From the NCBI RefSeq assembly GCF_039654945.1, contig NW_027361711.1, positions 1,240,001 to 1,304,000 of the forward strand: a DNA stretch of 64,000 nucleotides, in the 5' to 3' direction. Of this stretch, positions 6,039-58,299 are shown piece by piece (the first letter of the stretch is position 1; every line of letters begins with the position of its first letter). The translations under genes were made by a program, and so were the position numbers. The stretch comes from Dendrobates tinctorius (Eukaryota). The notes under the pieces were generated by a model that saw only the letters and a program-made list of their open reading frames with translations, made no database searches and was not told where the DNA came from.

Positions 6039-6400
6039 CAGGGCTCGGCAAACTTCTGGCCCTTTGGCTGTGCCCGTTCGGCCCATGGGCAGGCACAGAC
6101 AAAGAGGCTGGTATGAATGCTTCAGCAGTGCGAGCTAGTCGGCGTTTGGTGCTGACGGCGATGTGGAGAGCAGTGTTAAGGATGGTGAGGAGAGTGGAGC
6201 AGAAGGCGGGAAGGAGGGTGGAGTGGAGGTCTGTGCTGTACATGGTGCTGAGCTGTGTGCACCTGACTTGCATAGAGATACGTACGGATGCAGGTCATAT
6301 GATTACAGCATGATGCCTGACTTCACACAGTTAGCGCTCCAGCCTATTGCCTCATCACTGCACATAAAGTTTGTTCACCCCCACGCTACCAAAACATAGC
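6039..6400 (+). mobile_element. hAT-Charlie-like left-end fragment
   Basis: Starts CAGGGCTCGGCAAAC with CGGCCC-type subterminal motifs. No right TIR found. Confidence 0.4.
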
Positions 6401-13450: not shown

Positions 13451-13682
13451 TATGTAGGGGTGGACTGACCTATGGACATGTCTGATGAAGCGGGAAATGT
13501 AAAGAGATGATGTATACTATGCTTTATTATGACTTGTATGTATATGTGTGGGACAACAGCTGGAATTAGGGAAAGATGGTGTAGTACCGGGTTTTGGCCA
13601 CAAGATGAAGACAGAGAGCAGGGGGGAGCACCCGTTGAGTAGTCCGGGTGGTCCTACCCCAATGAAAGGGAATTGTTATAGA

Positions 13683-14215
13683 GATCAAAATTATGTTTAC
13701 TAAATACCCTTATCATTATTATTACCTTTATGCATCATTTGCAGTTTATTTTTTACTTTTTAGTTCAGGATATTAGTGTTTTTTGCTTTTTGTTTTCTCT
13801 GATTAATGGTCATGTGTTAATATGCACTTACATTGTGCATACACATTAACTTACTTTCTCAGTTCAGATTCGTTTTTTATTCATTTCATTGTGCATTCAG
13901 TGCATATATGGGTGTGACCGCCCTCTTTCTGAGCTGGGAAAACCATCCTGCCTGGCCTAAGCTTTTACTAGTGGTTCAGCTGCTCGATCCTTGTTCACAT
14001 TCACGTCACTTGGCAAGTGAAAAGGTTTTAAATACTAGAGTAGGGACTGTCCCACAAGGGTTGCCGTGACGTGGCGGGATGGCTTGTACATTATTTTGAT
14101 CAAAATTATGTTTACTAAATACCCTTATCATTATTATTACCTTTATGCATTATTTGCAGTTTATTTTTTACTTTTTAGTTCAGGATATTAGTGTTTTTTG
14201 CTTTTTGTTTTCTCT
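13683..14215 (+). mobile_element. Non-coding PLE/retrozyme-like insertion: about 1.28 head-to-tail copies of a 415-nt unit
   Basis: 118-bp direct repeat at 13683-13800 and 14098-14215 (one mismatch seen), T-rich 3' end, contains the pseudoknot motif. Confidence 0.55.
14036..14126 (+). ncRNA. Candidate HDV-like double-pseudoknot RNA, family 2
   Basis: P2 AAGGGT/ACCCTT, P3 GCC/GGC with loop GTGACGT, candidate P1 CTGTCCC/GGGATGG, palindromic P4 centred on TGATCA, J4/2 CTAAAT. Confidence 0.5.
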
Positions 14216-14401
14216 TGTTGAGGGCACAGCAGAATACTGCAGTACGCAGGCGCCGGACCTTTAAACGAGAGGTACCAACAATTTTGACTACATGTGTAAA
14301 AGCTACTAATATCAAATATAAAAATTGCACACTACAAGTAAAAATTATACATGAGTAATATAAATATGTTTAAAATGCAAATAGCTCAGTCTTAACTTTA
14401 A

Positions 14402-25030: not shown

Positions 25031-25032
25031 GA

Positions 25033-28000: not shown

Positions 28001-28546
28001 CAACGGATAAAAAACCTCTGGGCTGAAGTCCAGCGTAATATCTCTCGGGCCCAGGGGAGGTACAAATATTTTGCTGACAAAAAGAGAGCCCCGGGACACA
28101 TGTTTCAGTTAGGAGAGAAGATTTGGCTTTCCACACGTAACATCAGCTTAAAGGTACCATCAGCTAAATTGGGACCAAAGTTCATTGGTCCATACGAGAT
28201 TATGGAGATAGTAAACCCAGTGGCATATAGGTTGTGTCTCCCCGCATCCTTAAAAGTATCCAATGTGTTCCATAAATCTCTGTTGAAACCCATAGGGTCT
28301 GTCAAGGAGGACTCCGAGTCTGTTGTTCCTCCAGTGTTGGTGGAGGGTCAATTGGAGTATGAGGTCGGACATATTGTGGACTCTCGGCGGGTGCGCCGCT
28401 CCTTGCAGTACCTGGTCCACTGGAAGGGATATGGACCAGAGGATCGCTCATGGGTCCCTGCTCACTCTGTACATGCAGATCGCCTGGTTCGGACTTTCCA
28501 TGCCAAATACCCAGGGAAGCCTGGGGGTCCAGAGGCCCCCCGTTGA
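25033..28546 (+). pseudogene. pol: pol of provirus 1 (RT-RNaseH-integrase-chromodomain), split by a solo LTR
   Basis: LDLRGAY, MPFGL, YLDD, VEVDAS, HHCC, SMDFI...VSDR...GQTE, GPKFIGPY, YEVGHIVDSR...YLVHWKGY. Confidence 0.95.
26917..27821 (+). mobile_element. Solo LTR (905 bp) nested in the integrase
   Basis: TGTCATG...CATTACA, TSD TCTGA/TTTGA, integrase resumes afterwards. Four ~48-bp AAATTCGCC...CTGGAGGCGGTGT repeats. Related to 48238-50362. Confidence 0.88.
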
Positions 28547-29899: not shown

Positions 29900-32160
29900 T
29901 ACGGTACATTCCATATGAGGGCTTGATTTTTTGAGGGACAAATTGTACTTTTGAATGACATTTTACCATTTCCTGTACTGGAAAATGGGAAAAAAATCCA
30001 GTTGCAGTGAAATTATAAAAAATAACTGCAATTCTGACGGATACTACCTGGTTTACTGTATATCATATCTATAGCAATAGCATAGAGCAAGAGCATAGCA
30101 ACAAGTATCAAGCAGTAATATATGAGATGTGAATATACGATTAGTAAGATCAAACTTGAAATGTGAGAAACTAATAATGCTTGATCATATCAGTCACATG
30201 TAGTGTTATTTCTCTTTGTTAAGCCAATAAAAAGATGTTTAAAACAAAACAAAAATAACTGCAATTCTGACATTGTTTTATTGGAATTGTTTTTACGGCA
30301 TACATTGTGTGGTAAAATTTACCTGGCAGTATGATTCTCCTTGTCATTACAATTACGGTGATACCAAACTTGTCCTATTTTTTATTACAATGGTGAAAAA
30401 ATAATCAGAAATTAGCAAAAAAAAATTTTGATTGTGATGCCATGTTCTGACACACGTAACATTTTCATGTTTTGGTCGATGAAGCTGTGTAAGGGTTTAT
30501 TTTTTGCAGGACCAGACAACCTTTTATTGATATCATTTTGGGATAGATATGACATTTTGATCGCTTCTAATAGCAATATGTTACTGTGTTGCCGTAACTG
30601 AAAAACCACAGTTTATGTTTTTAACCCATTGTGACCTAGTGATTTTCCGTGTTCATTTTTTCCTCCTCTTCTTACATGAAGGCTTGTTTTTTTTTGCGGG
30701 ACGAGATGTACTTTTGGATGACACCATTGATTTTTACCATATAGCGTACTGAAAAGAGCAAAAAAATGCTGGGGATAGCGACGGCCGTGCGCAGGCCGTC
30801 GCTGCGCCCTGAAACGCTAATGTGAAACCACCATTATTCAGCACATTCACTATATGGTAAAACTGACCTGGCAATATGATTCGGGGGCCAAAAAAATGTA
30901 TTTCTTGCCTTTTGATCTCTTTTCTCATTACGCCGCTTACTGATCTGATTTTATATATTTATATAGATTGGACATTTCTGTATGCAGTGATGACAAATAT
31001 TTGGGTTTTTATTGTTTTAGTTTCAATGTTACAAAAGAGGGGTGATTTGAACTTTTTTATTTTGTCAAAAATGTAGTTTTTACTGTTTTAATAGTTCCCG
31101 TAGGAGACTTGAAGCTGCGATAATCTGATCGCTTGTGCTATATATAGCATACTTTAGCACTGCTATGTATAGCAGAAATCACGATCTCGTATGAATGCCA
31201 ACCATGAGTCAGCATTCACAGGAGTATTATAATGACACGTATGGAGGTCTTCTGCAGACCTGGCTGTCATAACAACCCATCGGCGCCCCGCAATCACATG
31301 AAAGGGGAGCCAATGGGTGAGATTAGGATCCACTTCCTGCTGGCACATGATTGACAGCAGGACTTAACTGGTTAACAGCTCCACCTGCGGCTGTTAGAGG
31401 CACTTGATGGCTGATCGTGTCAGCCATCAAGTGTGGGGAAAGATGTAGGCGTATGAGCCCACATCAAATGCAGGGACATGACCTTTGACGTAAAAATACA
31501 TCAAAAGGTCATGAAGAGGTTAATATTTATGGTGTTTACATGATCTGGCTAAGTATTTTATCATTTGATAATTCAGGCTTTTATGGATATGGTGATACCA
31601 CATATGTGTATTTTTAAAATTGTGTTAAAATGTTTATTTTAAACATGAGAAAAGGGAGGTGATGCAAACTATTTTTTTTACACTTTTTTTTTCTTTTACT
31701 GCATTTGTCAGTAGCTTTAGAGGACTTAAACTTGTGATCATGCAATCGCTTATGCTATATACAGTATTACTGAAGTATTGCTGTACATAGCAAAAATAAT
31801 GGTCTAGTTTGTAACCCAGTCACAGGCTGGAATTCAACGTAGCTTCGTGATGACAGCCATGGAGGGCTTCAACAGACCCCCAACTGTCATAACAACAAAT
31901 CAGTGTCAGCCAATGGAAGCATAGAAAGATTTATCTCCATGCTGGTGCGCTCTTAATGCCGTTTTCAAAGATTAATAGCGGCATTTAACAGGTGAACAGT
32001 TGTGGGCGAAGCTCCATTTGACCCAAGGCTGTTAGAGGCAAATCCTGGCTGTTTGTTGTAGCCATTATCTGCTGTGTATGGGGTGGGCTCAGCCTGTGAG
32101 TACGTTCCATAAGCTTGTTTCCGACTGTGCCGAACTTGTATAAGAGACATTGGGAAGGGG
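29900..32160. mobile_element. Degraded piggyBac-like non-autonomous fragments (two right ends)
   Basis: Ends AAGAGG-TTAA (31514-31523) and AAGGGG-TTAA (32155-32164), with mutually similar subterminal blocks. Confidence 0.55.
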
Positions 32161-32859
32161 TTAATGGAAACTTGTCAAACGTTTCACAAAGTTCAAACAT
32201 CAGACAATGTGAAACACATATGGGCTCCTCAGAAACAGAAAACTCTGAAATGTCAGAGAAAAAAATAGTTTGGAATATGAGCAGAACACAGAGAGTAGTG
32301 ATGGGCGAGCACTAAAATGCTCGGGTGCTCGTTGCTCGGGTCGAGCACATTGGAATGCTTGGGTGCTCGACCCAAGCAACGAGCCCAATGTAAGTCTATG
32401 GGAAACTCGAGCATTTTTCCAGCAGCCACCATCCCCGGCAGTCTGCAGAGGGACTAGAAATTGTGGAAATCAATGGGTACAGTGCTCAAATGACATGTGA
32501 GCAGCATGGGGAAGATGACTGGTAGCATTTCTGACTCCCGGGTCACTGCTGATGTTGTCAGAGTCTAACACCACTTTTAGAGAATCACAATAAAACATAT
32601 AAAAACTAAACCAAAATAGATTTTCCTGGAAATTTGTTAAGGAACATCCTTTCCAGGGTAATGACTTGTATATAAGGCAAAATAAATAACCAAAAACTAA
32701 AATGCTGCTCCACACCTTGGGCTATGTTCACACATAGCGGTTTTGATACATTTTTGAACTTTAGCATTGCTTTCAACCAAGACAAATGCATTCACTGGGA
32801 AATGTCATTTTAACATTTTACAACCTGATCTGGCCATGTGGTGTGTGACACATCATCAG

Positions 32860-35800: not shown

Positions 35801-38351
35801 CAAGAATTGGTCAACCGCAGCGGTAGCGGCATTTCAGTTTTTGAAAACATGTTTCATGTCGGCCCCGGTTCTTGTTCAACCGGACCCGTCGGAACCATTT
35901 ATTGTTGAGGTAGATGCCTCAGAGGTGGGGGTGGGGGCGGTATTGTCCCAGGGACTCGCCACTTTGACCAATTTAAGACCTTGCGCCTTTTTCTCAAAGA
36001 AATTCTCTCCTGCGGAGAGAAATTATGATGTGGGAAATAGAGAACTTCTGGTCTTTAAGTTGGCCTTTGAAGAATGGAGGCATTTTTTGGAGGAGGCTGT
36101 CCATCCTATAACCGTAATTACGGATCACAAAAACCTAGCTTATATTGAGTCAGCTAAGAGGTTGACTCCTAGACAGGCTAGATGGTCACTTTTTTTCCCG
36201 ATTCAACTTCTCGATCACTTTTCGGCCAGGGTCCAAAAATGTCACAGCAGATGCTTTGTCACGCAGCTTAGATCCGGTGTGTCCCCCGGAACCTCCATCC
36301 TCCATTCTTCAGCCTGGGGTGGTGGTGGCAGGTATTTCGAATATGTTGGAACGAGAGATTTGGGAAGCCCAGTCTCTTGCACCGCCGGCTAAGCCAGTGG
36401 ACAAACTTTTTGTGCCAGCTCAGCTTCGCCTTAAGGTCCTCCGGGAGTTCCATGACTCAGTTCTGGGTGGACATCCAGGGATCTCGGCTACCCGGAAGGC
36501 CTTTGCTAGAATATTCTGGTGGTCTTCTTTAGCCTCTGATGTTGGGGAATATGTGTCTGCGTGTGATGCTTGTGCCCGTGCAAAAACCCCCCATAACCGG
36601 CTGGCCAGGGAATTGGTACCACTGCCAATTCCTGAGAGACCATGGACGCATTTGTCCATGGATTTCATCACCAACCTTCCCACCTCCAAGGGTAATACCG
36701 TCGTCTGGGTTGTGGTGGACAGGTTTAGTAAGCAGGCACATTTTGTACCTTTGGCAGCTCTACCTAATGCGGAAACATTGTCCAGATTGTTTGTTGAGCA
36801 TGTGGTGCGGTTGCATGGGGTACCCTTGAATGTGGTGTCTGATAGAGGAGTGCAATTTGTTTCCAGATTTTGGAGGGCTTTTTTTTAAAAGGGTATTGGT
36901 CTGTCCTTTTCATCCGCTTATCATCCAGAGACTAATGGGCAGACCGAGCGGACCAATCAGTCGCTGGAGCAAATTCTGCGTTGCTTGACCTCAGTCCGAC
37001 AAGATGATTGGTGTTCTGTGTTACTGGTGGCTGAGTTTGCATTTAACAACCGCGTTGACCAGTCTACGGGTACATCTCCCTTTTTCTGCAATTATGGGTT
37101 TCATCCTCATTTTGGAGAATTTTCCCATTTGAATTCTGGGTGTCCTGGGGCGGATGAGACGATCCAGCGGTTGGGGGAGGTATGGCGAGAGGTCCAGAGT
37201 AACATTACGAAGGCCCAGGACAAATTTAAATTTTTTGCGGACAAAAAAGATCCGCGGAACCGGTGTTTCAGATTGGGGATAAGGTATGGTTGTCCACCAA
37301 GAATATAAGACTCAAGGTCCCCTCTGCGAAGCTTGGACCCAAGTTTATCAGTCCTTATGAAATTACCGAGGCAGTTAACCCGGTGGCTTTTCGGTTGCGT
37401 CTCCCGGCGTCTCTGCGGATCCCAAATGTTTTTCATAAGGCCCTTTTGAAACCTGTGAGGTCTGCTGGGGAGGGATCATCAGCTTCCCCAACACCGATTT
37501 TGGTAGACGGGCAGTCGGAGTACGAGGTGGAACGAATTGTCGACTCCAGGTTGGTCCGTCGTGCCCTTCAATATTTGGTACATTGGAAAGGCTACGGTCC
37601 TGAAGAACGCTCGTGGGTTCCTGCTCGATCGGTTCATGCGGATCGGTTGGTCCGGGCCTTTCACGCCAAGTACCCTGAGAGACCTGGGGGTCCAGTGGCC
37701 CCCCATTGAGAGGAGGGTACTGTCATGATCCAGGATGGGGTTTCACTTTGGCTCATCCTGGTCTGACTGGGGGTTAATTGTTCTGCCTCTCCCTGGCAGA
37801 GGGCGGCTATTTAATGCTCACTGGACCTAGGTCTGGTGTCAGTTATACTCCTGCCCTCGGCTGAGTTAGTTGACCTTGTGCGTATGTGTGCCTTGTGCCT
37901 GATATCTTGCTTGTTTGGTTTTGATCCGGTTCTGTCCCTGTTACGAGTTCTGCCTGTCCCTCTTGTACTGCGCTACCTCTCGTGTATGACTCTCTACTTG
38001 TGACCCGACTTCTCTCTGCTCATCCCCTTGGTACCACGTCGCCATCTTGTGTATGACCTTTGGCTTTGTCTGACCTCCCGTCTGTTTATCCCTCCTGTAC
38101 CTCGCTGTCCGTACTGTGTGTGAACTCCGTTTTGCCTGACTCTGAGTTTTCTGTCTTCTCTGAAAGCAGCACACTAAGCCCCGCCCCCTTGCAGTCACGT
38201 GACTGTAGGTCCCGTTCCGGCTTGCTAAACTTTATCACTCAGGTCCTGTGCACCTATACTTTCTGGCTGTCCTGATCCCCAGGGTTCCCTACAGTGCGGG
38301 TGAGTCCCTGCTCAGCGGAGGCTGTACGCCGGCGCTGTCAGGATCCTGATA
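32860..38351 (+). mobile_element. Chromoviral Gypsy provirus 2, full length
   Basis: LTRs 32860-33494 and 37721-38351, TSD ATCAG, PPT GAGAGGAGGGTAC. Confidence 0.97.
33544..37709 (+). pseudogene. pol: gag-pol of provirus 2 with stops and frameshifts
   Basis: Knuckle CFHCGDSGHWRKVC, protease AFVDCGS, RT, RNase H, integrase, chromodomain YEVERIVDSR...WKGY. Confidence 0.95.
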
Positions 38352-39042: not shown

Positions 39043-41904
39043 TTATGTTACACTGCTATTATTCAGTAGTGTAGAGAGGTCTGGCCCAATGCACCCCTCT
39101 TTCATTTTTATAAGAGTCAGCCTGTCAGCATTTTCAGTTGACAGGCGGATGTGCTTATCAGTTATAATTCCACCAGCGGCACTAAAAACCCGCTCTGATA
39201 AAACGCTAGCGGCAGGGCAGGCCAGTACCTCCAAGGCGTATAGAGCCAGTTCATGCCATGTGTCCAGCTTGGATACCCAATAATTATAAGGCACAGATGA
39301 ATCACGGAGGACGTTTGTACAGTCAGCAAAGTACGCCCTCAGCATCTTCCCAAACTTTGCACTCCTTATGAGAATACCCCACTCCTCAGGGCCTGTGTGA
39401 TGTGAGGGACTGAGAAAACTCTGCCAGAACTTTGACAGTGTTGCGCTGCCTCTGTTGGATTGGAGTTGTCTCTCTCGCCTATACTTCTTGGTTGCCCAAC
39501 GAACTGTGACCTCTGTCGCCAGCGTTTTCAGTTGGGAATTTTTTAATAATTCCGCAACAAGGGAATTCTGGTACTGCCCCATTTTAGTAGACCTGTCCAC
39601 CTCGGGAATAAGAGACAGAAAGTTCTCCTTGTAGCGTGGGTCTAGAAGTGTCACCAACCACTAATGACTATCAACCAAAATTTGGAGAACTCAAGGGTCA
39701 CGGGAAAGGCAGCGTAGCGTACCATAAACTCAGTCATGTTTACCAGACTGCTAACAGGCAAGACTTCCGTGTCCTCACCAAGAAGGTGACTGACCATGCT
39801 CTCTTCCTCCTCCTCCCTGTCCTCAGGTCATGCATGCTTAACAGACGGTTGGACAGTTGTGCAGGTAATACTATCTATAGCGAAAGAAGTAGCTCCTCCT
39901 GTTCTTCCTCCTCTTTCTCATTGTCACCCACTCCATGTTGGAATGAGATGAGGCGGGGCTGTGTAAAATCACCCTGTATGGTTTCTTGCTCCATATGATT
40001 GTGCTTCCCCTGCAATGAACCCTCTTTGATTGTGAGCAGAGAGCATTTCAGAAGACAGAAAAGTGGGATGTGATGCTAATTATGGCGTCATCGCCGCTCA
40101 CCATCTTAGTGGAGTCCTCAAAGTTTTGGAGGATGGTACATATGTCTGACATCCATGTCCACTCCTGAGGTGTTGTGTGAAGTCTGAACTGAATACTGAC
40201 GGCTTTGTTGATGCTGGTCGTCAACAACTGCCCTCTTCTGCTCACAAATCCTTTTCAACATCTGCAATGTAGAGTTCCAAGGCGTGGGGACATCACACAT
40301 CAGTACGTAAGCTGGAAGCTGTAAACACTGCTGAAGCACGGCATGGGTGGCGGAAGCTGTAGCTGACTTTCTAAAATGGGCACACAGGCGGCGTACCTTG
40401 ACAAGCAGATCCAGCAGCTCCGGGTAGGTTTTGAGAAACCGTTGAACCACGAGGTTAAGCACATGGACCCGGCATGGTATGTGTGTGAGCTCTCCTTGCC
40501 TCAGAGCCACCACCAGGTTCTGGCCATTGTGACACCCAACCATGCCTGGCTGTAGGTTCAGCGGTGTCAGTCACAGATCTGCCTGCTCTATCAGAGCTGT
40601 CCACAACTCTTCAGCATTGTGTGGTTTGTCACCTAAGCATTAGCTTCAGCACAGCCTTTTGCCGCTTGGCTGAGGAAGTGCTGCAGTTCTTCCAGCTTGT
40701 GACTGATGTGGTCATTTCGGAGATGGAGGCTGAAGAGGAAGAGGATGAGGTGCAGAAGCTGTAGACTGTGGGAGCAACCCCGATTGTCATAGGGCCCGCA
40801 ATCCTCGGCATCAGGAGGAGGTGTTCGATTCCGAGGTCCGACTGGGTCCCTGCTTTCACTATGTTAATCTGAGATGTACCGTCCCTGCCCACAAGCACTT
40901 GTCCACATGTCTGTAGTTAGGTGGACTTTCCAAGTAACTGCATTGTTGAGGGCACGGCTAATGTTGCGAGACACATGCGGGGATGGCACACCGGGAGAAA
41001 TAGTGGCAGCTGGGGACTGAGTACCGAGGGACGGCCGCCGACATCAGATTGCAGAAAGCTTCCATCTCCACAAGCCGAAAAGGCAACATCTCGAGCACAA
41101 GCAGTCGTAAAATGTGTGAATTTAGTAGTGTGGCTTGTGGGGCGTTGGCTGTGTATTTGCGCTTGTGTTCCAAGGACTGGGGTATGGACAACTGAACGCT
41201 AGGCTGGGACGTGGACGTGCTTGATGATGGTGCTAGTTGAGTGTGTGCAACGACAGGTGCAGGGCAGGAGTCATCATCGCACGCACTATGGACAGGGGAT
41301 TGGCTTGCACGCACAACAGTGGAAGAAGCAGTGGTATCACCTGCAGACACTGTTCCTGGACCCTGTGGTTCAGCCCACAAAGTCAGGTGTTTTGGTGCCA
41401 TCTGACTGAGCATGCTGGTGGTGGTCAGGCTAGTAGTTTTGCTGCTGATGCTGATGCTGGCCTGGCAGGTGCTGCAAATGGCCTTTTGGGGTTATCGGCA
41501 GAGTCTTTAAAAAACAACCATACTCAGGAAGACCTAACAGTTGTACTGGCAACTTCCATCATATTGGTGTTACGGGGAACGGTTGCCTGTCTTCTGTCTG
41601 CGGCCACCACACTGCTTCTTCCTGCCTGCTGGGGTGCTACTCCTCCCTCCCCCTGTGTGCTGCTGTCCTCACTCTGCATGTCCTCCTGCCAGGGTGAGTC
41701 AGTTACTATATCATCCACCACCTCGTCTTCCATTTCCCCACCCTGGTGCTCCTGACTTTCTGGCAATTGTGTCTCATCATCGTCTACCTCTTGTGACACT
41801 TTCCCACCATCGCCTTTGTGTGAACGTGGCTGCTCAAATATTTGGGCATCGTTACATGCAATCTCCTCTTGCCCCGCTTCAAGTTGACTGGGCGAGAGGC
41901 CCAA
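39043..41904 (-). pseudogene. hAT (ZBED-like) transposase, disrupted
   Basis: HIPCRVHVLNLVV, DVPTPWNST, LLDPRYK, dimerisation domain PAASVLSERVFSAAG. Confidence 0.92.
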
Positions 41905-47550: not shown

Positions 47551-48277
47551 TGTGATTTGAAAAAAATATTCTGGGAATAACCCTTTAATTATAGTTATCA
47601 ATATTTATGCCTATTTTAATTCATTTAATAATAAAACTAGAAAAAAAAGTAAGATGTGATGGTGACAAACATTAATCTCATCCTTTGAGCCCCCCATGCT
47701 ACAGATAGTCTGAGAGAAGGAGGTGATACGATAATGTAGTAAAATAACAAAAAGGACTTAAAGGGGCTTTCCCAAAATCACAAGTTATCATTTCACTACA
47801 TAATAGAGGCTAACTTGCTGATTTTTGGGGCTCCAGAACCACGAAAATATGGCTTACAGGAATATTTTGTGACTTTGGGAAAAACTACTTCAACATGACA
47901 CTACATGCATTATTTCTTTTTCTTTTTAGATGGTTTTCAAAAAATGCATTTCTATCTGTAGTCACATAAAAATAGTCTTTTTGTTATAAGAGGACCTAAC
48001 ATTTCCTAAAAAAAAACAGTGGTGACAGCCAATTTCATATATTTAAATGAGGAAGAAACTAAAGATTAAGTGGTACAAATAATTGAATTTATAAATGAAG
48101 TAATATATGGCAAAGTTATCTTATCTTTTTATAAGATGAGCTATAAGGTTTTCTCAATATTCATCTAGTATATAAAGTTTACTTAGGTAAAATCTATTTG
48201 GGACACCTTAATGTGTCTCTATATTACATTTAAAAGGTGTCATGATCTGAAGTGGATCTGACAGTTTTAAAAGCACA

Positions 48278-49397
48278 AAAAAAGAAAAAAGAAGCCAGAG
48301 ATGCTAAGGTTAGAACGCATAACATAAAGTGCATATGCACATAATATCTAACTGTATTCAAAATGAGATATTTAGCAAAAAAATTGATCAATTCAATTGA
48401 GCCACCCCGCCGCGCCAAGGCAATCTCATGTGGGGGGTCCTACTCTACGTTTTAATAAACTGTGCCATTACGGCCTCCTAGATAAATTAAAAGCAAGACC
48501 ACTTTAAGTGCAATCCGTACCCGAGCATTTCTGGATCGCTCCCATGATGCCAGAAAAAGCAAGTGCGAATGAAGGCCAACCAGGTCTGAATGCAGACATG
48601 TCAGGTTTAGCTTCCACACATTGCCTGAGCAGCAAGCATAGATGAAGGGCAATGCAGGTTCAGATACAGGTGCACAATTAAATAAAGCTTGGGGTAGGGC
48701 AGGGCTGCTGTGTGTGTGTGCACAGCAGCCTAGATCCATCACAGTGAACACAGAAAAAATGGCGAACATAACCCAGCGCGCACGGCAACAATGGTGGTCA
48801 GCGCATGTTATGCGTTCTAACCTTAGCATCGCTGGCTTCTTTTTTCTTTTTTTGTATATTGGTATGTGGCTGACCACCACTGTTGCCGTGCGCGCTGGGT
48901 TATGTTCGCCATTTTTTCTGTGTTCACTGTGATGGATCTAGGCTGCTGTGCACACACACACAGCAGCCCTGCCCTGCCCCAAGCTTTATTTAATTGTGCA
49001 CCTGTATCTGAACCTGCATTGCCCTTCATCTATTCTTGCTGGTCAGGCAATGTGTGGAAGCTAAACCTGACATGTCTGCATTCAGACCTGGTTGGCCTTC
49101 ATTCGCACTTGCTTTTTCTGGCATCATGGGAGCGATCCAGAAATGCTCAGGTACGGATTGCACTTAAAGTGGTCTTGCTTTTAATGAATCTAGGAGGCCG
49201 TAATGGCACAGTGTTTATTAAAAATGTAGAGTAGGACCCCCCACATGAGATTGCCTTGGCGCGGCGGGGTGGCTCAATTGAATTGATCAATTTTTTTGCT
49301 AAATATCTCATTTTGAATACAGTTAGATATTATGTGCATATGCACTTTATGTTATGCGTTCTAACCTTAGCATCGCTGGCTTCTTTTTTCTTTTTTT
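48278..49397. mobile_element. Non-coding PLE/retrozyme-like inverted insertion (544-nt unit)
   Basis: Arms 48278-48802 and 48869-49397. The spacer holds an extra copy of the unit's 3' end. TSD TTTTAAAAGCACA. Confidence 0.8.
49227..49311 (+). ncRNA. Candidate HDV-like double-pseudoknot RNA, family 1 (mirror copy 48363-48447 on minus)
   Basis: P2 ATGAGAT/ATCTCAT, P3 GCC/GGC with loop TTGGCGC, P1' GGGGTGG, P4 AATTGATCAATT, J4/2 CTAAAT. Confidence 0.5.
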
Positions 49398-50829
49398 TTT
49401 TAAAAGCACAGGGTGAACTTTTTTTACTTTGGCAAGTGCCAAGTGACTTGACTGTCCCCGGTGGTGGTTAGTGGAATCGCACTTTAGGTTTAATGTGCAC
49501 GTAATTATGAATCAGGTGTGGGGCTCTATAAGTGAGTCTCAGGGTGTGCAATCACTGCTGGTGATATTGATTCATTCTGAGTTTATGAAGCCTGGGTGAA
49601 CATGGAGCTGAAGAGGAGTCCTGCGCAGTCAGCCAGAGGAGACGAGTGGCAGCTAATGGTGTCTGCAGGAATTGCTGGCATGGTGTGGAGGAGTCGCAGT
49701 TTATGGTGTCGGCGGGAAGTGCGTGCATGGCTTTGTGGAGTGGCGACTATGGAGAGAGTTGCACTCGGCATGCTCGACTTGGTGGCCGAGAGCTGGACTC
49801 AAGCATGCTTAGAATTTTGGCAGAGGCTGACTCATCCTTGGGACTCTGTTATTGGACTGCTGCAACTGGAGATGGACTCTGCTCCAAGGCTGCACTATGG
49901 TGTAGGATCCAGGATGGTGATGGATCTGGGTGGAGGAGAAGACGCACACAGGTGGTGGGGCTCTGTTGCAGGAGCATAAGCACAGAGCATAAAGCTAAGT
50001 GGTGTTTCCCCTGTATTGTCTTCTTTCCTTTTGTGTCTCTAGTGCAGTGGTGGGATTAGTCTCCGCACTGACCAATTCCCTAGTGAGGGTTTAGGGTCAG
50101 GGCGAGCAAGGGTTTAAGGTTCGCGTGCGGCGACAGGTGCGGAGCCTGTATAGGGAATGTGAGGAAGTGCAGGGACACTGCCTCAGGGGAGTGCAGGAGG
50201 TCTCCATGTCCCCATTCCCTATCGCAGGGCCCACCATTGTTAATGTTTCCCAGGTTCCCCTTATTATTTAAATTAGCCACTGGAGGCGCTGTATCCAGGG
50301 TCACGTGTGTTATGGGTCCGCCTTGTGGTATCATCTGCGTCCACACACACGTGACCATGACAAAAGGAACCTTGCAGATGATACATGCTGTCTGATCCAC
50401 AGACAGCATGTATCAGTCGCTGATTTCAGCCATGTATGTTTGACTCTGAAATGTTCCAGTGTGACAAAGAAAAATATACTTTAATAGCCGCCAGGGACCA
50501 AACTGCATGAGAGACTAGTCGGAAAGGGGGATCCCCAGTGGCTTCGTCTCATCTGCTGCCAGTGAATCACAGGGAACTAGGTGGGAGAAGTTGCCGGGGA
50601 CAAGTCTTTCTGACTAGTCACTCGTGCAGCTTGGTCACCTGCAGATTTCAAAGTATGTTTTATAAGCAAGATTTTAGCGTAACCTCTAAGTCAGCATAAA
50701 GTGAGAATTCTGAGGTTAGTTTGGTGAAATCAAACATATACCTTTAGACTGCATTCACACTTTAAGGCTGCAGTGCATTTTGCCACTATCATGGGACTTT
50801 TTGACAATCATTGCAACAAAAACCACACC

Positions 50830-51292: not shown

Positions 51293-54200
51293 CAGGGCCG
51301 CCATCAGGGCATGACAGCCCTTACTGCTGTTTGGGGCCCCGTGAACAGCAGTACAGAAGGGGGCCCCGCAGATCAGGGGCCCCGCTCCTGTGCTTCTAGT
51401 CATCGGGCCCCAAGTGCTGTGCGTCATTGGGCACTGGGCGGGCCCCAAGTGTGTGCTGCGGCTGGGCCTGCAGCACACACATCAGCAGAGCCGCCACAGC
51501 GGCCGACATCAGAGGTACAGAAGTGCTGAAGGACCTGTGGTGACGTTATCATTACCACAGGCCTTCACCATTGATCAGCCCGCCCCCTTATCACATGACG
51601 ATGACGTCACCACAGGTCCTTTCAGCTCACACAGCAGCAGCTCCCATCTTCAACGCAGGAGCGTGGCCAGGTAAGAAAAAAGTTTTTATTTTATTTTATT
51701 ATTGAAAGGGGCAAAACAGTTCCCTGACAGGATGGAAACACACAGGGGCAGAATGGAGACTCAAGGGCAGGATTGGAGACACCGGGGCAAATATGGAGTA
51801 ATGGGGGCAGAATGCAAGACATGGGGCAGAATGCAGACATGATGGGGGCAGAATGCAGACATGATGGGGCAGAATGCAAGACATGATGGGGGCAGAATGC
51901 AAGACATGATGGGGGCAGAATGCAGACAAGGGGGAAGATTGCAAGACATGGGGTCAGAATGCAGACATGATGGGGCAGAATGCAATAAATGGGGGCAGAA
52001 TGCAGACATGGGGCAGAATGCAGACATGATGGGGGCAGAATGCAGACATGATGGGGCAGAATGCAAGACATGATGGGGCAGAATGCAAGACATGATGGGG
52101 GCAGAATGCAGACAAGGGGGAAGATTGCAAGACATGGGGTCAGAATGCAGACATGATGGGGCAGAATGCAATAAATGGGGGCAGAATGCAAGACATGATG
52201 GGGCAGAATGCAAGACATGATGGGGGCAGAATGCAGACATGATGAGGGCATAATGCAGACACGGGGCAGATTGCAAGACATGGGGGCAGAATGCAAGACA
52301 TGATGGGGCTGAATGCAAACACGGGGCAGATTGCAAGACATGGGGCACAATACAGACATGGAGACAGAATGGGGGGCAGAATGAAGACATGATGGGGACA
52401 GAATGCAGACATGATGGGGGCAGAATGCAGACACGGGGGCAGATTGCAAGACATGATGGGGCAGAATGCAGACATGATGGGGCAGAATGCAGACACGGGA
52501 GCAGATTGCAAGACACGGGGCAGAATGCAGACATGGGGACAGAATGCAGACATGATGGGGGCAGAATGCAGACATGATGGGGGCAGAATGAAAGACATGA
52601 TGGGGCAGAATGCAAGACATGATGGGGCAGAATGCAAGACATGATTGGGGCAGAATGCAATACATGATGGGGGCAGATTGTAAGACATGGGGCAGAATGC
52701 AGACATGATGGGGGCAGAATGCTGGACATGATGGGGGCAGAATGCAAGACATGGGGGCAGAATGTGCCAGTAAGACAGGATGGGCAGAATGTGACAGTGA
52801 GACACAGGAGGGGGCAGAAAGTGAGACATGGGGCAGAATGCAAGACATGGGGGCAGAATATGACAGTAAGATACAGCAGGGGGCAGAATGTAAGAGTGAG
52901 ACACAGGAGGGGGCAGAATGTGAGACATGGGGGCAGAATGTGACAGTGAGACACGGACAGTGAGACAGGAGGGGGCAGAATGTGACAGTGAGACACAGGA
53001 GGGGGCAGAATGTGACAGTGAGACACAGGAGGGGGCAGAATGCGACAGTGAGACACAGGAGGGGGCAGAATGTGACAGTAGTGACACAGGAGGGGGCAGA
53101 ATATGAGACACGGGGGCAGAATGGACATGGGGCAGAATGTGACAGTAAGACACAGGAGGGGGCAGAATGTGACAGTGAGACACAGGAGGGGGCAGAATGT
53201 GACAGTAAGACACAGGAGGGGGCAGAATGTGACAGTGACACACAGGAGGGGGCAGAATGTGACAGTGACACACAGGAGGGGGCAGAATGTGAGGCACGGG
53301 GGGCAGAATGTGACAGTAAGACACAGGAAGGGGCAGAATGTGAAAGTAAGACACAGGAGGGGCAGAATGTGACAGTGAGATACAAGAGGGAGCAGAATGT
53401 GAAGCACAGGGCAGAATGTGACAGTAAGACACAGGAAGGGGCAGAATGTGAAAGTGAGACACAGGACGGGGCAGAATGTGAGACACGGGGGGCAGGATGG
53501 GAGACATGGTGCAGGATCAAGGGGCAGGAGAGATACGATGTAGACGAGGCAGGATCGGGAGATCATATGAGGCAGAATGGATACTCATGAAGGCAGAATG
53601 AGAGAAAATATGGCTGAAGCCAGGAATGAGACACACGGGGGCCAGGATGAGGGATATTATTACCATAGGGGCTAATTAAGGGATATTATTACTGCAGTGA
53701 TGTATTTATTTTATTTTTTTGAGGATACTGTTTTAAATGGGGGGGTCCTATTACTGTGCAGAGCGACACTATGTCACCTTTTTTTCTTCATCTGGTGTAG
53801 TGTAGAAGTTGGGAAAAAATTAGTAATGTGTTCTGCAAGTGGAGCTCTAGATAACTGTGTTATTTCCTGCAGAGACGAGCCCTGGCTGGAAGACGTGATG
53901 GCGATCTGTGCTGGATGAAAGATGAAAAGCAAAGATGAAGGACTTCACCTAGAGATGTCACTGGTGAGTCAGTGTGTTAAACCTGTGCACTGACACTATA
54001 TACAGAGTGCCTTTGTACAATGTCACCAGTGATCACTGTATTACCTGTACACAGACACTACATACTAAGTACAGATCTCCTGTGTATAATGGCACTTATG
54101 GTGATAGTATTGTTTTTTTTAATTAATGATCAGTATTGTACCGTGTGGTGGAAATATGTGGTCTGGGCATGGTGCCGTGGTATTTGTTCCCTGTATGTGC

Positions 54201-55406: not shown

Positions 55407-58299
55407 TCTCCATGCAAGACAACCTAGACTGCCTATCTATATCAAAAACTCATCATTATTCAGAGAGACTATATTCGCATGAAAGGCAGTTAGAAAAAAT
55501 ACAAGTTGTCATTTAGATTTTGTAAATACTTGCCTCTCTGGAATAGTTCAGAATTCATACAGAGAGTGGAAAATAAACTATTCAAGGAATGAAGGTCAAA
55601 GTGGATAAATGCTCTACTGCTGTTACATCCCACAGAACCAAGGTTAATGAATAAAGGTGACTTAATTGAGAAATTCAACCTAAATCCCAACAAAACTATC
55701 CAATATGATCAGATTAGACATTCTTGATGGGAGTCCAACTTGAAACTTTATTTAAACACTGGGAGAACGCACTTAATGACCAAGACATTGGATCTAAAAG
55801 TAATACTCAATGAGATGTGGAGGGAAACCCAATACATGATCATACCCAAGGCAATATATGCCTTTGATCTCCCAAAAACACCCCTTAAAGTGAACCTGCC
55901 AGCAGGATTTTGCTAAGTAAACTACAGGCATTGTCAGATTGGCAGTGTTAAACTGATTAAAATGATACCTGGTGTGAAGAAATTCGTCTTGTTGGATCTT
56001 GTCTAATCAGTGTTAAAAGTTTTCAGTTAATGATATGCCTGTGCTGCGGGGGGCATCATACTGTGTAAAGAAGGCTCTAGTGACCACCATACTGTGTGTG
56101 GGGCAGTGTGAGAAGGGGGTACAATTTGTAGAGTGCAGCATTGTGGGCAGTATGAAGGCATTGTGTGAAATGAGGGTACAGTATGAAGAGGGGTTAGCAT
56201 GCTGTGGGGACAGTGTGGAAATATGTAGTGAGCATACTGTAAGTGAAAACAGTGGAGAGGGCACAGTCATAGTATAGGCCATTGTTCATTAGGGCAGACA
56301 TTGTGGTAGTAATAGCTTATAAGAGCAGACAGTGTGGTAGTTAAAGCTGATAATGGCAGACGATGTAGCAGTTATAGCTCATAAGAGAGGTGTGATGCAG
56401 TGACCGGTATTAGATGTGAGGGTCACTGTGTCCCCTAAGATGCGTACAGAAGAGTACTGAGGCTACGGAAGTGCAATGCAGTCACAGGCAAAGCTGTGAT
56501 TGCAATGCATAATAAAAGTAAGTGTTGGTCTTGGGCAAGCTATTTGTCCAAGGCAGATTTAGAAGACCTGTCATGGGCTTTTATGTTTGAAGCGGACTAT
56601 AGAATGGTAGTGGGGCAGTTCGCTTCCTTCCCGGCCAGGTCTTCCAAGTGGCCTACGGTCACAGATTCCTCGTAAAAACCATGCAGTAGAGGGTTGGGTA
56701 TGTCAGTTTTGGGTTTCCAAGCATGCAGAGCAAAAGGCTCTGCAGAGCTCAACCTGTGCGAGGTAACACAGAGCCAAAAGGCTTGGCAACCCTCAGCATA
56801 GCACAGTGGTGCAGTCGCCCATGGCAACCAGTCTCGGATGTGGACTGTCTTGTTTCCCGGCTGCGATCCGGAGGATACCGTGTGCTGTTTATTTCTGTGA
56901 GTTTGGACATTAAATATATTTTGCTTTGAACTTTACTGCATAAATTGGTCAATTCATGTGTACTCGGCAGCCAGGATCCTACCCCTCCAAGAAGATATAT
57001 AGACTTCAGTCTGAGTGAGGATTCACATTAGGTTCCCATAGAGGTTTAGACTTCAGTTTAAGAGAGGATAGGCATTAGGTCCTGGCAACGAGAATCGCCT
57101 TATCATGGCTGCCAGGTTCACATGAATTGACAAGTTTATGAGTTAAGCATTCTCAATTTTTCACATTTCTAGTGCAATAATGCAATTACATTTTCATATT
57201 TCATGTTTGCATGCTATAGTGCTACAGACTGCTGCTTTTTGCTTGATTGTATATGAGTTGGCTACTCTAGGTAAGCACCTGTTCAGACCTTATTTATGTT
57301 TGGATGTGACGGTCAGTTTTTTTATATTTGTATGTAATAGCCTTCTGACTGAGCACTCCGCCCCTTAGCCTATGGCATTTTTAATTGCAACAGGATCCTA
57401 CCCCTTCATAGACATATACTGTAGACTTCAGTATAAGAGAGGATTCACATTAGGTTCCCATAGAGGTTTAGACTTCAGTCTAAGACTATGTGCACACATT
57501 CCGGATTTGTTGCAAATCCACAGCGTTTTTTCCACGCGGAATTGCTCAAGCAATGTTAATCAATGAGAATCCAGAATTGGTGTGCACATGCTGCGGAAAA
57601 TTCCGCACTGATTCACAGCGTTTTATTTTCCGCAGCATGTCAATTGTTTTTGCAGATCTGCAGCATTTCTGAACCCATTGACTTACATTGAGTCAGTCAA
57701 ATCCGCAGCCAAACCACAGGTATAAAAAGGTCTGTGGATTTGCGTGCCAAAAGCGCTGCAGAAAAGAAGGAGGAAGAGTTTATGGGCGGAGAATAAGTGT
57801 GAGCAGAGAATATGTGGGTGTCTGTCTGCGGATGTCTGTGTGTGTGTAGCCAGGCATCAACTGATGGGACTACTACTCCCGTCTGGCTATGTCTGCTGTC
57901 ACACATAACAGTGACAGCATGAGCCAATGATGGGACACTAGGCCCATCATCTGGCGACTGTGTTCAATTGTAAAACAAAAAAAAAACATTCATACTCACC
58001 AAACACCTAATACACCGACAGGTAAAGTGCTCTACCCGGCCTCCAATGATACACTACGGGAGGGATCACCTCCTGTCAGTGTATCATTGCGCCGCCAGAA
58101 GAGTTCATCGCAGTTCATGCTGTCATTTGCAGCACCGCTGCTTGAGAAAACAACCTTCAGTGGCACAGAAGAGAACCTGATGATGCTGGACCTGAAGTCA
58201 CAGGTAAGCTGACTAATGGACATTATTTTTATGTGACGGGAGGCCAGGTCCTAGAACCCATGTTGTCCTCTGCCATGACTACAGCCCTGGCCCTCCCTC

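What the first reader, a model, noticed from the sequence alone, without database searches (positions are those of the whole stretch)
49227..49311. Covarying HDV-like double pseudoknot shared by two dissimilar non-coding retro-insertions
Seen in the sequence: 49227-49311 (mirror 48363-48447) and 14036-14126 align as TAGAGTAGG(G)AC..CCCAC-[P2]-T-GCC-NTGRCGY-GGC-GGGRTGG-CT-[palindrome centred on TGATCA]-CTAAAT-[P2']. P2 changes sequence but stays paired (ATGAGAT/ATCTCAT versus AAGGGT/ACCCTT). The motif ends 86 and 89 nt before a T-rich 3' end in the two families, which otherwise do not align by eye. Established: the order P1-P2-P3-L3-P3'-P1'-P4-J4/2-P2', a 7-nt L3 ending CGY and a CUAA J4/2 define HDV-like ribozymes. 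Departures from the canon: L3 position 3 is G and the base after P1' is C (an apparently flipped P1.1 pair), and the nearest P1 (CTGTCCC, or CCCCCC with a bulge) does not begin with G1. The true 5' P1 strand may be distal, for example GACCACC at ~48872 or GACCGCC at ~13917. Inference: a variant HDV-fold ribozyme doing the job that hammerheads do in Penelope-type elements. I do not know of a description but could not search for one.
Basis: partly seen in the sequence, partly recalled or inferred. Interest (0 to 1): 0.85.

Follow-up and report, generated by a model that had tools for sequence, protein, structure and literature searches.

The report
HDV-like ribozyme in frog retroelements
Three unrelated-looking non-coding jumping repeats in this frog-like genome share an ~80-base RNA fold of the hepatitis-delta self-cutting type, in a little-noticed form already shown to cut in trypanosome elements, placed where related repeats normally carry a hammerhead ribozyme.

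Summary
The motif is at 49237-49311(+), its mirror at 48363-48437(-), and 14047-14126(+). I found a third, diverged family at 57081-57154(+). P1 and P2 are fully compensated between families, and the proposed P1.1 pair changes from G-C to A-U. No Rfam model matches.

The same core (P1 starting with C, L3 UUGRCGY, C after P1') occurs in dozens of phage and metagenome lineages. There, P1 and P2 pair although they were not part of the search pattern. One copy starts exactly after a tRNA-Tyr 3' end. Another lies upstream of a LINE endonuclease gene. A covariance model built only from those sequences ranks the four frog copies as the top four hits in the window.

The supposed departures from the canon (C1-G37, reversed GC pairs in P1, a different P1.1) were published for the cleaving L1Tc/ingi ribozymes. 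No distal P1 is needed.

The carriers are hammerhead-free, non-coding units with Penelope-type insertion anatomy. What looks new is a retrozyme-like element carrying an HDV-type ribozyme.

Cleavage was not tested. The local copies are imperfect: family 1 has a bulged P1, and family 3 has U in place of the catalytic C. The scan noted this motif earlier on other pieces of this genome, with mixed verdicts.

The parts
14047..14126 (+). Family-2 HDV-like fold, the best copy. P1 14047-53, J1/2 14054-55, P2 14056-61, P3 14063-65, L3 14066-72, P3' 14073-75, P1' 14076-82, C38-U 14083-84, P4 14085-14114, J4/2 CUAAAU 14115-20 (candidate catalytic C at 14115), P2' 14121-26. The predicted cut is between A14046 and C14047.
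   Evidence: pairing-only descriptor; 37.0 bits, E 2.7e-7 with a model built only from non-frog sequences.
14036..14046 (+). Upstream box TAGAGTAGGGA, just 5' of the predicted cut. It is also at 49227-49236, and a weaker form (GGATAGGCATTAGGT) precedes the family-3 fold. Its function is unknown.
   Evidence: Similar TAGG-rich boxes precede the fold in metagenome group A and in L018.
13801..14216 (+). Family-2 unit (416 nt), ending in a T-rich tail.
13676..13800 (+). Upstream partial tandem copy of the family-2 3' end (97% identical). Its 5' end lies inside the P4 hairpin, not at the predicted cut site.
49237..49311 (+). Family-1 HDV-like fold. P1 has only 6 bp, with a bulged U at 49270. The rest of the core is intact, with the candidate catalytic C at 49299.
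   Evidence: 20.9 bits, E 0.005; the model places a 1-nt deletion in the 5' strand of P1.
48363..48437 (-). Mirror copy of the family-1 fold in the inverted arm.
48277..49399 (.). One family-1 insertion. It consists of an inverted copy (48277-48802, minus), a 51-nt 3'-tail fragment (48805-48855, plus), then a full 544-nt unit (48856-49399, plus). Target-site duplication TTAAAAGCAC lies at 48267-48276 and 49400-49409.
57081..57154 (+). Family-3 HDV-like fold. P1 CCTGGCA 57081-87 pairs with TGCCAGG 57110-16. P2 GAGAAT 57090-95 pairs with ATTCTC 57149-54. P3 is GCC/GGC, L3 is UUAUCAU, and U57117 follows P1'. P4 is 57119-42. J4/2 is UUAAGC 57143-48, so the catalytic C is replaced by U and the L3 CG has become CA. 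This copy is probably dead.
   Evidence: 16.9 bits, E 0.06; the minimum-free-energy fold is exactly P1+P3+P4.
56931..57485 (.). Family-3 locus. It holds an inverted fragment covering L3 to P4 (56931-56977, minus), then about 1.2 direct units with a 419-422 nt period (56972-57485, plus). The right end is not at the canonical 3' end, so the locus is probably interrupted or rearranged.
30039..30250 (-). 5'-truncated family-3-like copy (P4 3' half, J4/2 UCAAGC, tail). A short inverted piece precedes it. It is flanked by the 21-bp duplication GTCAGAATTGCAGTTATTTTT at 30251-30271 and 30018-30038.

Best explanation
The ~80-nt motif is an HDV-like self-cleaving ribozyme fold of the L1Tc-type subclass. 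In this subclass P1 starts with C paired to G37. A single P1.1 pair joins L3 position 3 to the base after P1'. L3 reads UUGRCGY, and J4/2 starts with the catalytic C (CUAAAU). The fold sits in a shared ~175-nt 3' module (ribozyme plus ~90-nt tail) of at least three otherwise dissimilar non-coding retroelement families. These families insert the way Penelope-like elements do: target-site duplications, 5' truncation, and partial tandem and inverted upstream copies.

Inferred mechanism: in transcripts of tandem or read-through copies the ribozyme cuts just 5' of C1, after ...UAGAGUAGGGA. This leaves a 5'-OH on the ribozyme side and a 2',3'-cyclic phosphate upstream. The cut frees unit-length element RNA, which may be ligated into a circle, for reverse transcription starting at the U-rich tail.

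Shown here: the fold, its covariation and the insertion anatomy. Inferred: catalysis, the partner enzyme and any circular intermediate. The individual copies in this window are dead-end insertions. Family 2 looks catalytically intact. Family 1 has a bulged 6-bp P1. Family 3 has lost the catalytic C.
For: - **Fold in the window.** The pattern has 3 hits against 0 expected. A pairing-only descriptor finds families 2 and 3, with about 1 chance locus expected per window.
- **Covariation between frog families.** 4 of 7 P1 pairs change on both sides and 100% of cells are paired, against 28-61% when partners are slid. P2 is ATGAGAT/ATCTCAT, AAGGGT/ACCCTT and GAGAAT/ATTCTC. P1.1 is G-C in families 1 and 2 and A-U in family 3.
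- **Strand.** G-U pairs in P1 fix the plus strand as the RNA strand.
- **Same core elsewhere.** Among 76 distinct phage sequences chosen on the core plus P2 only, 64 have a 7/7 P1 (null 6%), with 48 different P1' sequences.
- **P1.1 across the class.** L3 position 3 and nt 38 occur as G-C (28), U-A (13) and C-G (22). The G-C state always comes with C1-G37.
- **Independent alignment.** In 16 non-frog sequences, 99.4% of cells are paired and 6 of 7 P1 pairs are compensatory.
- **Functional contexts of this core.** In L001, P1 starts at 6185, directly after tRNA-Tyr 6100-6184, which is the published theta-ribozyme context. In L025 the fold lies about 840 nt upstream of an APE endonuclease ORF of a LINE.
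- **Model built without frog sequences.** The four frog copies are the top four window hits at 37.0, 20.9, 20.9 and 16.9 bits. The next hit scores 11.6 bits.
- **Literature.** L1TcRz cleaves in vitro and its product starts at C1, paired to G37, with J4/2 CUAAGC (PMC3185411). Trypanosomatid ribozymes differ from R2 and HDV in the orientation of the GC pairs in P1 and in P1.1 (PMC4035085).
- **Element type.** Target-site duplications and inverted plus tandem copies are present. No CUGANGA hammerhead box occurs on either strand. The element ORFs have no homologues. The three families are colinear over ribozyme plus tail.
Against: - No cleavage data exist.
- No Rfam HDV-like model matches, even at E of 10 or less.
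- Family 1, the abundant ~544-nt unit, lacks a clean 7-bp P1. It has 6 bp plus a bulged U.
- Family 3 has U for the catalytic C and CA for the L3 CG. Its A-U P1.1 therefore rests on two transitions in a decayed copy.
- In family 2, L3 position 1 is G where the class has U.
- None of the five copy 5' ends or junctions in the window lies at the predicted cut site. Three lie in or next to P4 or L3.
- The DNA 3' ends are at the tail, not at the sequence just upstream of the cut. A linear cleaved monomer therefore cannot be the template.
- The public sequences used for the model were fished with a frog-derived core, so agreement in P3, L3 and nt 38-39 is partly circular.
- Thermodynamic z-scores of the nested parts are unremarkable.
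- No Penelope reverse transcriptase carrying this module was seen.
Confidence: 0.6

Rival explanations
1. The fold is real but no longer, or never, catalytic in these elements. It would serve as the structured 3' recognition module that the partner reverse transcriptase binds, as LINE/SINE 3' tails do. It could be an ex-ribozyme kept for its shape.
For: The fold sits about 90 nt from the 3' end, inside a module that is colinear in three families whose bodies differ. That is where RT-recognition elements lie. The abundant family 1 keeps P2, P3, L3, P4 and J4/2 but has a defective P1. Family 3 keeps all helices although the catalytic C is lost. No copy 5' end in the window lies at the cut site.
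Against: The positions kept are exactly the catalytic ones of the class: the CG in L3, the P1.1 partner and the first C of J4/2. These are also kept in phage and LINE contexts where only cleavage makes sense. The two roles do not exclude each other.
Confidence: 0.25
2. The elements depend on a LINE, as NARTc and SIDER depend on L1Tc, rather than on a Penelope-like element. The ribozyme module would be borrowed from the end of an endonuclease-bearing LINE.
For: The same core, with a similar TAGG-rich upstream box, lies upstream of an APE-type endonuclease ORF in metagenome group A (L025). All published retroelement HDV-like ribozymes are in non-LTR LINEs and their non-autonomous partners (PMC3185411, PMC4035085).
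Against: In LINEs the ribozyme is at the 5' end, and copies end in poly(A) or simple repeats. Here it is 165-170 nt from a T-rich 3' end. The insertions show full-length inverted twins primed from both target strands, plus partial tandems. Those features are hallmarks of Penelope-type insertion. Earlier scan notes report abundant Penelope-like elements in this genome (unchecked).
Confidence: 0.12
3. The resemblance is a chance similarity within conserved repeat sequence and there is no RNA structure.
For: Only three independent sequences exist in the window. Nested-fold energies are not better than those of shuffles. There is no Rfam hit.
Against: Three helices are fully compensated between families that otherwise do not align. 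The identical core is tied to compensated P1 and P2 in dozens of unrelated lineages. The frog-free model hits the copies at E values down to 2.7e-7.
Confidence: 0.03

Closest known systems
L1TcRz and the L1Tc/ingi-clade HDV-like ribozymes of trypanosomatids, including the non-autonomous NARTc, RIME and SIDER elements (PMC3185411, PMC4035085)
   Same: Both are HDV-like double pseudoknots whose product starts at C1, paired to G37. Both have GC pairs at the base of P1 reversed relative to HDV and R2, a minimal P1.1 and a 6-nt J4/2 (CUAAGC there; CUAAAU and UUAAGC here). Both are carried by retroelements, including non-coding non-autonomous ones. L1TcRz cleaves in vitro.
   Different: The trypanosomatid ribozyme is the first 77 nt of a LINE or SINE-like element and doubles as an internal promoter. 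Here the fold is 165-170 nt from the 3' end of tandem-unit, Penelope-type elements of a vertebrate. It has a long AU-rich palindromic P4 and a conserved purine-rich box upstream of the cut. I could compare only nt 1-5 and 27-77 of L1Tc, taken from primer sequences.
Theta ribozymes, the minimal HDV-like ribozymes next to phage tRNAs (PMC10879173)
   Same: The architecture and many core letters match: P3 GCC/GGC or ACC/GGT, L3 U-NN-ACGU, J4/2 CUAA. They are active in vitro and are killed by changing the catalytic C to U. One phage copy of the frog-type core (L001) sits exactly at a tRNA-Tyr 3' end.
   Different: Every published theta sequence I read (68 rows) has G at +1 and a C...G inner P1.1 pair, apparently fixed by the search descriptor. 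P4 is reduced to a few nucleotides. The frog type has C1-G37, G-C38 and a 24-30 nt P4.
Animal non-LTR retrozymes and hammerhead ribozymes in Penelope-like pseudo-LTRs (PMC7229834; bioRxiv 10.64898/2026.07.22.740005)
   Same: Both are non-coding, tandem-unit, non-autonomous elements that insert in the Penelope manner and carry a small self-cleaving ribozyme in every unit. The cleavage chemistry is the same, which would allow circularisation.
   Different: The ribozyme class differs: HDV-like here, type I hammerhead there. No hammerhead core is present in these units. Circular RNA and Penelope dependence are not shown here.
R2 and other LINE 5' HDV-like ribozymes (PMC3774820)
   Same: An HDV-like fold is used by a retroelement to process its RNA out of a longer transcript.
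   Different: Those ribozymes have the canonical G1 and a C-G P1.1. They sit at the extreme 5' end, and their copies start at the cut site.

Membership tests
HDV-like ribozymes | Segment order P1-J1/2-P2-P3-L3-P3'-P1'-P1.1'-P4-J4/2-P2', forming a nested double pseudoknot | tested here: met
   Read directly in all three families. The pairing-only descriptor recovers families 2 and 3.
HDV-like ribozymes | A 6-7 bp P1 next to the cut site, supported by covariation | tested here: met
   Family 2 has CTGTCCC/GGGATGG and family 3 has CCTGGCA/TGCCAGG. Four of 7 pairs change on both sides. At class level, 64 of 76 sequences have 7/7 against 6% in the null, and 6 of 7 pairs are compensatory. Family 1 reaches only 6 bp plus a bulged U.
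HDV-like ribozymes | A P1.1 pair between L3 and the base(s) after P1' | tested here: met
   The pair is G-C in families 1 and 2 and A-U in family 3. In phage sequences with the same L3 frame the pair occurs as G-C, U-A and C-G and almost never unpaired. Only one pair forms; the second position is U/U.
HDV-like ribozymes | Catalytic cytosine at the first position of J4/2 | tested here: met
   C14115 in family 2 and C49299 (mirror 48375) in family 1. It is not met in family 3, which has U57143. In public sequences where my pattern's CTAAAT matched elsewhere, the true J4/2 still starts with C.
HDV-like ribozymes | G1-U37 wobble at the cleavage site | tested here: not met
   All frog copies have C1-G37. 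This is not a universal feature: L1TcRz cleaves and its product starts at C1 (PMC3185411).
HDV-like ribozymes | Match to a curated Rfam HDV-like covariance model | tested here: not met
   There was no hit at gathering score in the window, nor at E of 10 or less in 271-nt stretches around both families. The Rfam models cover narrow canonical subfamilies.
HDV-like ribozymes | Mg2+-dependent self-cleavage giving 5'-OH and 2',3'-cyclic phosphate, abolished by changing the catalytic C to U | not testable with these tools
   This needs in vitro transcription and cleavage assays.
Animal non-LTR retrozymes | Type I hammerhead ribozyme in each tandem unit | tested here: not met
   There is no Rfam hammerhead hit and no CUGANGA box on either strand of the three families.
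Animal non-LTR retrozymes | Non-coding tandem units with at least two ribozymes in the same orientation, able to release a unit-length RNA | tested here: inconclusive
   The units are non-coding. The loci here hold 1.1-1.3 direct units with only one complete ribozyme per strand. Longer arrays are reported in earlier scan notes, which I did not check.
Animal non-LTR retrozymes | Circular RNA intermediate | not testable with these tools
   No transcript data were available.
Penelope-type (PLE-mobilised) insertions | Target-site duplication, 5' truncation, and an upstream partial tandem and/or inverted copy | tested here: met
   Family 1 has a 10-bp duplication around an inverted copy, a tail fragment and a full unit. 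Family 2 has a partial tandem. The family-3-like copy has a 21-bp duplication with inverted and direct pieces.
Penelope-type (PLE-mobilised) insertions | An autonomous partner (RT plus GIY-YIG) sharing the terminal module | not tested
   The window has no Penelope RT. Its RT ORFs are Ty3/gypsy.

The most novel reading that the evidence does not exclude
These frog families are a second class of animal retrozyme. They would be non-autonomous passengers of Penelope-like elements whose tandem transcripts are cut to unit length by an L1Tc-type HDV-like ribozyme instead of a hammerhead. The units would then be circularised by the host RNA ligase and copied in rolling-circle fashion from the U-rich tail. 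This would show that the retrozyme lifestyle is ribozyme-agnostic and that this HDV subclass spans phages, protists, invertebrate LINEs and vertebrate repeats.
Probability: 0.3. Interest if true: 0.8.

Novelty: new variant of a known kind. Interest (0 to 1): 0.6.

Why it matters
HDV-like ribozymes in eukaryotic mobile elements are known only at the 5' ends of LINEs and their SINE-like partners. Penelope-like elements and animal retrozymes are known only with hammerheads.

A hammerhead-free, Penelope-type, non-coding tandem element carrying an HDV-like ribozyme in every unit would broaden both pictures. It would also give a concrete, testable vertebrate example. The prediction is specific: a cut at A14046/C14047 that depends on C14115.

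The work also shows that the subclass with C1-G37 and G-C38 is common in phage and metagenome DNA. Published descriptors fix G1 and a C-G P1.1, so they would miss it, and current censuses of HDV-like ribozymes are therefore probably incomplete.

Tried and rejected
- **Rfam.** A scan of the whole window at gathering score, and permissive scans around both families, gave only chance hits (SNORD29, DUF805b).
- **Protein route to more frog copies.** Searching with the 122-aa ORF of the family-1 unit found nothing.
- **Frog-specific DNA pattern.** A pattern including the TAGAGTAGG box found 0 loci in metagenome contigs. I obtained no further frog copies, and the frog-side covariation rests on three families.
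I rejected them. The adjacent strand fits the class rule: P1 starts with C, 9-12 nt before P3. It is also what the model aligns.
- **Thermodynamic support.** Nested folds of the three copies are no more stable than shuffles (z from -1.8 to +0.7). The minimum-free-energy fold of family 2 uses an alternative GCCGU/AUGGC helix. This is uninformative for a pseudoknot.
- **Cut site against copy ends.** None of the five junctions lies at C1.
- **tRNA adjacency as a general context.** Only 1 of 36 phage copies of the G-C subclass is next to a tRNA.
- **Phrase search of the theta supplement** for the TG/CT variant failed because of the '|' separators. I read 68 rows instead.
- **Target-site duplication of the family-2 insertion.** I could not define it (TTGTT..AG only).
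- **L1Tc nt 6-26.** This stretch was not available, so its L3 and P1.1 could not be compared letter by letter.
Full report
**1.

The 22-nt core GCCNTGRCGYGGCGGGRTGGCT occurs at 14063(+), 49253(+) and 48400(-), and nowhere else in the window. None is expected in 100 shuffles. The box TAGAGTAGGRMC precedes each copy.

In family 2, the candidate catalytic C is at 14115. In family 1, it is at 49299.

- Family 2: A^CUGUCCC-AC-AAGGGU-U-GCC-GUGACGU-GGC-GGGAUGG-CU-[30-nt hairpin]-CUAAAU-ACCCUU (14047-14126)
- Family 1: A^CCCCCC-AC-AUGAGAU-U-GCC-UUGGCGC-GGC-GGGGUGG-CU-[24-nt hairpin]-CUAAAU-AUCUCAU (49237-49311)

The copy at 48363-48437(-) is the mirror arm of a 98-99% identical inverted duplication, so it is not independent. 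Apart from the motif, blastn finds no significant similarity between the two families.

**2. A third family in the same window.**

A weak blastn hit led to 57081-57154(+). It reads U^CCUGGCA-AC-GAGAAU-C-GCC-UUAUCAU-GGC-UGCCAGG-UU-[24-nt hairpin]-UUAAGC-AUUCUC.

- P1 and P2 are perfect and completely different in sequence from family 2.
- L3 position 3 is A and the base after P1' is U, where families 1 and 2 have G and C. The proposed one-pair P1.1 is therefore kept.
- This copy has U in place of the J4/2 C, and CA in place of the L3 CG. It is probably a decayed, inactive copy, and its P1.1 'compensation' rests on two transitions.

A descriptor that demands only pairing (P1 7 bp, P2 6-7 bp, P3 3 bp) finds three loci in the window: families 2 and 3 plus one unrelated locus at 32639. 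About 0.96 loci are expected per shuffled window.

The frog copies were aligned to a model built without them. On that alignment, 4 of 7 P1 pairs change on both sides and all comparable cells are paired. With partners slid, 28-61% are paired. The G-U pairs in the family-2 P1 would be A/C mismatches on the other strand, so the plus strand is the RNA.

**3. The core is a real and widespread HDV-like subclass.**

No Rfam family matches. I therefore scanned public collections for the core alone, leaving P1 (5' strand) and P2 free.

- **First scans.** Viral contigs gave 13 loci and metagenome contigs gave 54. In more than 10 independent lineages a 7-bp P1 starting with C lies 9-12 nt upstream and a P2 closes the fold. 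Loci lacking these look like chance matches.
- **Second viral scan.** It gave 76 distinct sequences selected on core plus P2 only. Of these, 64 have a 7/7 P1, against 6% when the P1' letters are shuffled. They carry 48 different P1' sequences.
- **P1.1 covaries across the class.** Among the real folds the P1.1 positions occur as G-C (28), U-A (13) and C-G (22, of which 17 have a 6-bp P1). The G-C state always comes with C1-G37.
- **Gap-free alignment.** Sixteen non-frog sequences give 99.4% paired cells and 6 of 7 compensatory P1 pairs. Slid controls give 38-56%. Those 16 were chosen for having a full P1, so one search is the unbiased figure.
- **Independent evidence for the catalytic C.** In several lineages my pattern's CTAAAT matched by accident downstream. 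The true J4/2 (CUAAGA, CUAA, CAAGC or CAAA) still begins with C.

**4. Functional contexts of that subclass.**

- In phage contig L001, P1 begins at 6185, the base after tRNA-Tyr (6100-6184, ending CCA) in a tRNA array. This is the context of the published theta ribozymes, which cleave in vitro and are killed by changing the catalytic C to U (PMC10879173). It is the only one of 36 G-C-subclass phage copies next to a tRNA.
- Metagenome group A is a repeat present on 16 short contigs. In L025 the fold lies about 840 nt upstream, on the same strand, of an ORF with an APE-type endonuclease domain (Exo_endo_phos_2, E 1e-22). That is a LINE. A TAGG-rich box like the frog one precedes the cut site there and in L018.

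**5. Model-based membership.**

A covariance model (41 positions: P1 and P3 plus L3 and nt 38-39) was built only from phage and metagenome sequences. It was run unfiltered on the window.

| Hit | Coordinates | Bits | E-value |
|---|---|---|---|
| Family 2 | 14044-14084 (+) | 37.0 | 2.7e-7 |
| Family 1 | 49234-49274 (+) | 20.9 | 0.005 |
| Family 1 mirror | 48400-48440 (-) | 20.9 | 0.005 |
| Family 3 | 57078-57118 (+) | 16.9 | 0.06 |
| Best noise hit | 39119-39148 (-) | 11.6 | 1.5 |

For family 1 the model places a 1-nt deletion in the 5' strand of P1. This leaves 6 C-G pairs and a bulged U (49270).

The test is partly circular for P3, L3 and nt 38-39, because the training sequences were fished with a frog-derived core. 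It is not circular for P1.

**6. The 'departures from the canon' are published.**

- L1TcRz, the HDV-like ribozyme at the 5' end of Trypanosoma cruzi L1Tc and NARTc, cleaves co-transcriptionally. Its product starts at C1, with strong RT stops at G37 attributed to three GC pairs at the base of P1 (PMC3185411).
- The primers in that paper give ...CUCAG^CCCUG for the cut site. They give UGGUGCCAGGGUC...GAAGCUAAGCGCCUGCUG for nt 27-77. So L1TcRz has C1-G37 and a 6-nt J4/2 CUAAGC. Family 3 has UUAAGC and families 1 and 2 have CUAAAU.
[quoted passage not shown] It adds that the original search descriptor was too restrictive (PMC4035085).
- All 68 published theta sequences I read have G at +1 and a C...G inner P1.1 pair. 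That census would have missed the subclass.

The ribozyme is a new member of a known subclass, not a new fold.

**7. The carriers.**

- **Family 1.** This is one insertion, 48277-49399, bounded by TTAAAAGCAC on both sides. It contains an inverted copy, a 51-nt tail fragment and a full 544-nt unit, so both outer ends are element 3' ends.
- **Family 2.** A 416-nt unit is preceded by a 125-nt copy of its own 3' end.
- **Family 3.** An inverted fragment is followed by about 1.2 direct units.
- **Family-3-like copy.** A truncated copy at 30039-30250(-) has a 21-bp duplication.

The units have no ORF with homologues, no hammerhead hit and no CUGANGA box. The three families are colinear over ribozyme plus ~90-nt tail, while their bodies differ.

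This anatomy matches what the literature describes for Penelope-like elements and their non-autonomous 'non-LTR retrozymes'. Both are known only with hammerheads (PMC7761336; bioRxiv 10.64898/2026.07.22.740005). Full-text searches found no paper linking HDV-like ribozymes with Penelope elements, retrozymes or frogs.

**8. Mechanism, and what is not shown.**

Inferred: cleavage 5' of C1 in multimeric or read-through transcripts releases element RNA.

The DNA 3' ends lie at the tail, 165-170 nt downstream of the cut, and the insertions cross tail-to-head junctions. The template must therefore be a multimer or a circle, and reverse transcription must start internally at the U-rich tail.

None of this is demonstrated:
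- No junction in the window lies at C1. Three lie in P4 or L3, which fits RT stalling or switching at the stable fold.
- The local copies cannot release a unit, because each strand carries only one complete ribozyme.
- Families 1 and 3 are defective here.

A structural role in RT recognition is the main rival, and it is compatible with catalysis.

**9. Earlier scan notes.**

The scan has flagged this motif many times on other pieces of the same frog-like genome, with follow-up verdicts ranging from 'real variant' to 'does not hold up'. I used those notes only as leads. The phage occurrence and the insertion anatomy were re-derived here. The claim that some copies start at the cut site was not checked.

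Noticed in passing
window 14036-14046, 49227-49236, 57064-57080; L023:473-487, L018:59-63: A purine-rich TAGG-containing box lies directly upstream of the predicted cut site in all frog families. A similar box is in two eukaryote-like metagenome lineages with the same ribozyme core, but not in the phage copies. An HDV-type fold needs nothing upstream of the cut, so this conservation is unexplained. It could be the 3' end of the released unit, a folding attenuator or a protein site.
   Followed up: partly
window 13683, 56977, 30190-30200: Three of the five copy 5' ends or inverted/direct junctions fall inside the palindromic P4 hairpin or L3 of the fold. This suggests reverse-transcriptase stalling or strand switching at this structure.
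   Followed up: partly
viral loci (e.g. L005, L069, L073, L087, L107): Minimal (~55-60 nt) HDV-like ribozymes with C1-G37 and a G-C38 P1.1 are common in phage contigs (28 of 64 clean folds in a truncated sample). They are mostly not next to tRNAs. The 68 published theta sequences I read all have G1 and a C-G P1.1.
   Followed up: partly
L025:1297-2298 (minus strand) and group A loci L020-L064: A high-copy repeat of an unidentified, probably invertebrate, host in JGI metagenomes carries the same ribozyme core upstream of an APE-endonuclease LINE ORF. Copies stay similar for 45-200 nt upstream of the predicted cut site, so the fold is not at the extreme 5' end of the repeat.
   Followed up: partly
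window 51784-53514: A 1.7-kb minisatellite with 22-nt and 30-nt periods (units GGGGCAGAATGCAAGACATG... and GGGGGCAGAATGTGACAGTGAGACACAGGA). It produces spurious ~600-aa ORFs on the minus strand.
   Followed up: partly
window 24364-28546 and 33919-36888; 39043-39657(-): Two Ty3/gypsy-type retrotransposon coding regions (RT, RNase H, integrase, chromodomain) and a hAT transposase C-terminal remnant. No Penelope-type RT is present in the window.
   Followed up: partly
window 32620-32700: One further locus satisfies the pairing-only HDV descriptor (TCCTGGA/TCCAGGG, P3 AAG/CTT). It has none of the conserved core letters and no J4/2 C. It is consistent with the roughly one chance hit expected per window.
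   Followed up: yes
window 57486-57760: The family-3 direct copy stops abruptly at 57485, where a sequence with internal inverted repeats begins (CTATGTGCACAC...; arms 57586-57601 and 57625-57640). This may be a later DNA-transposon insertion that interrupts the element.
   Followed up: no
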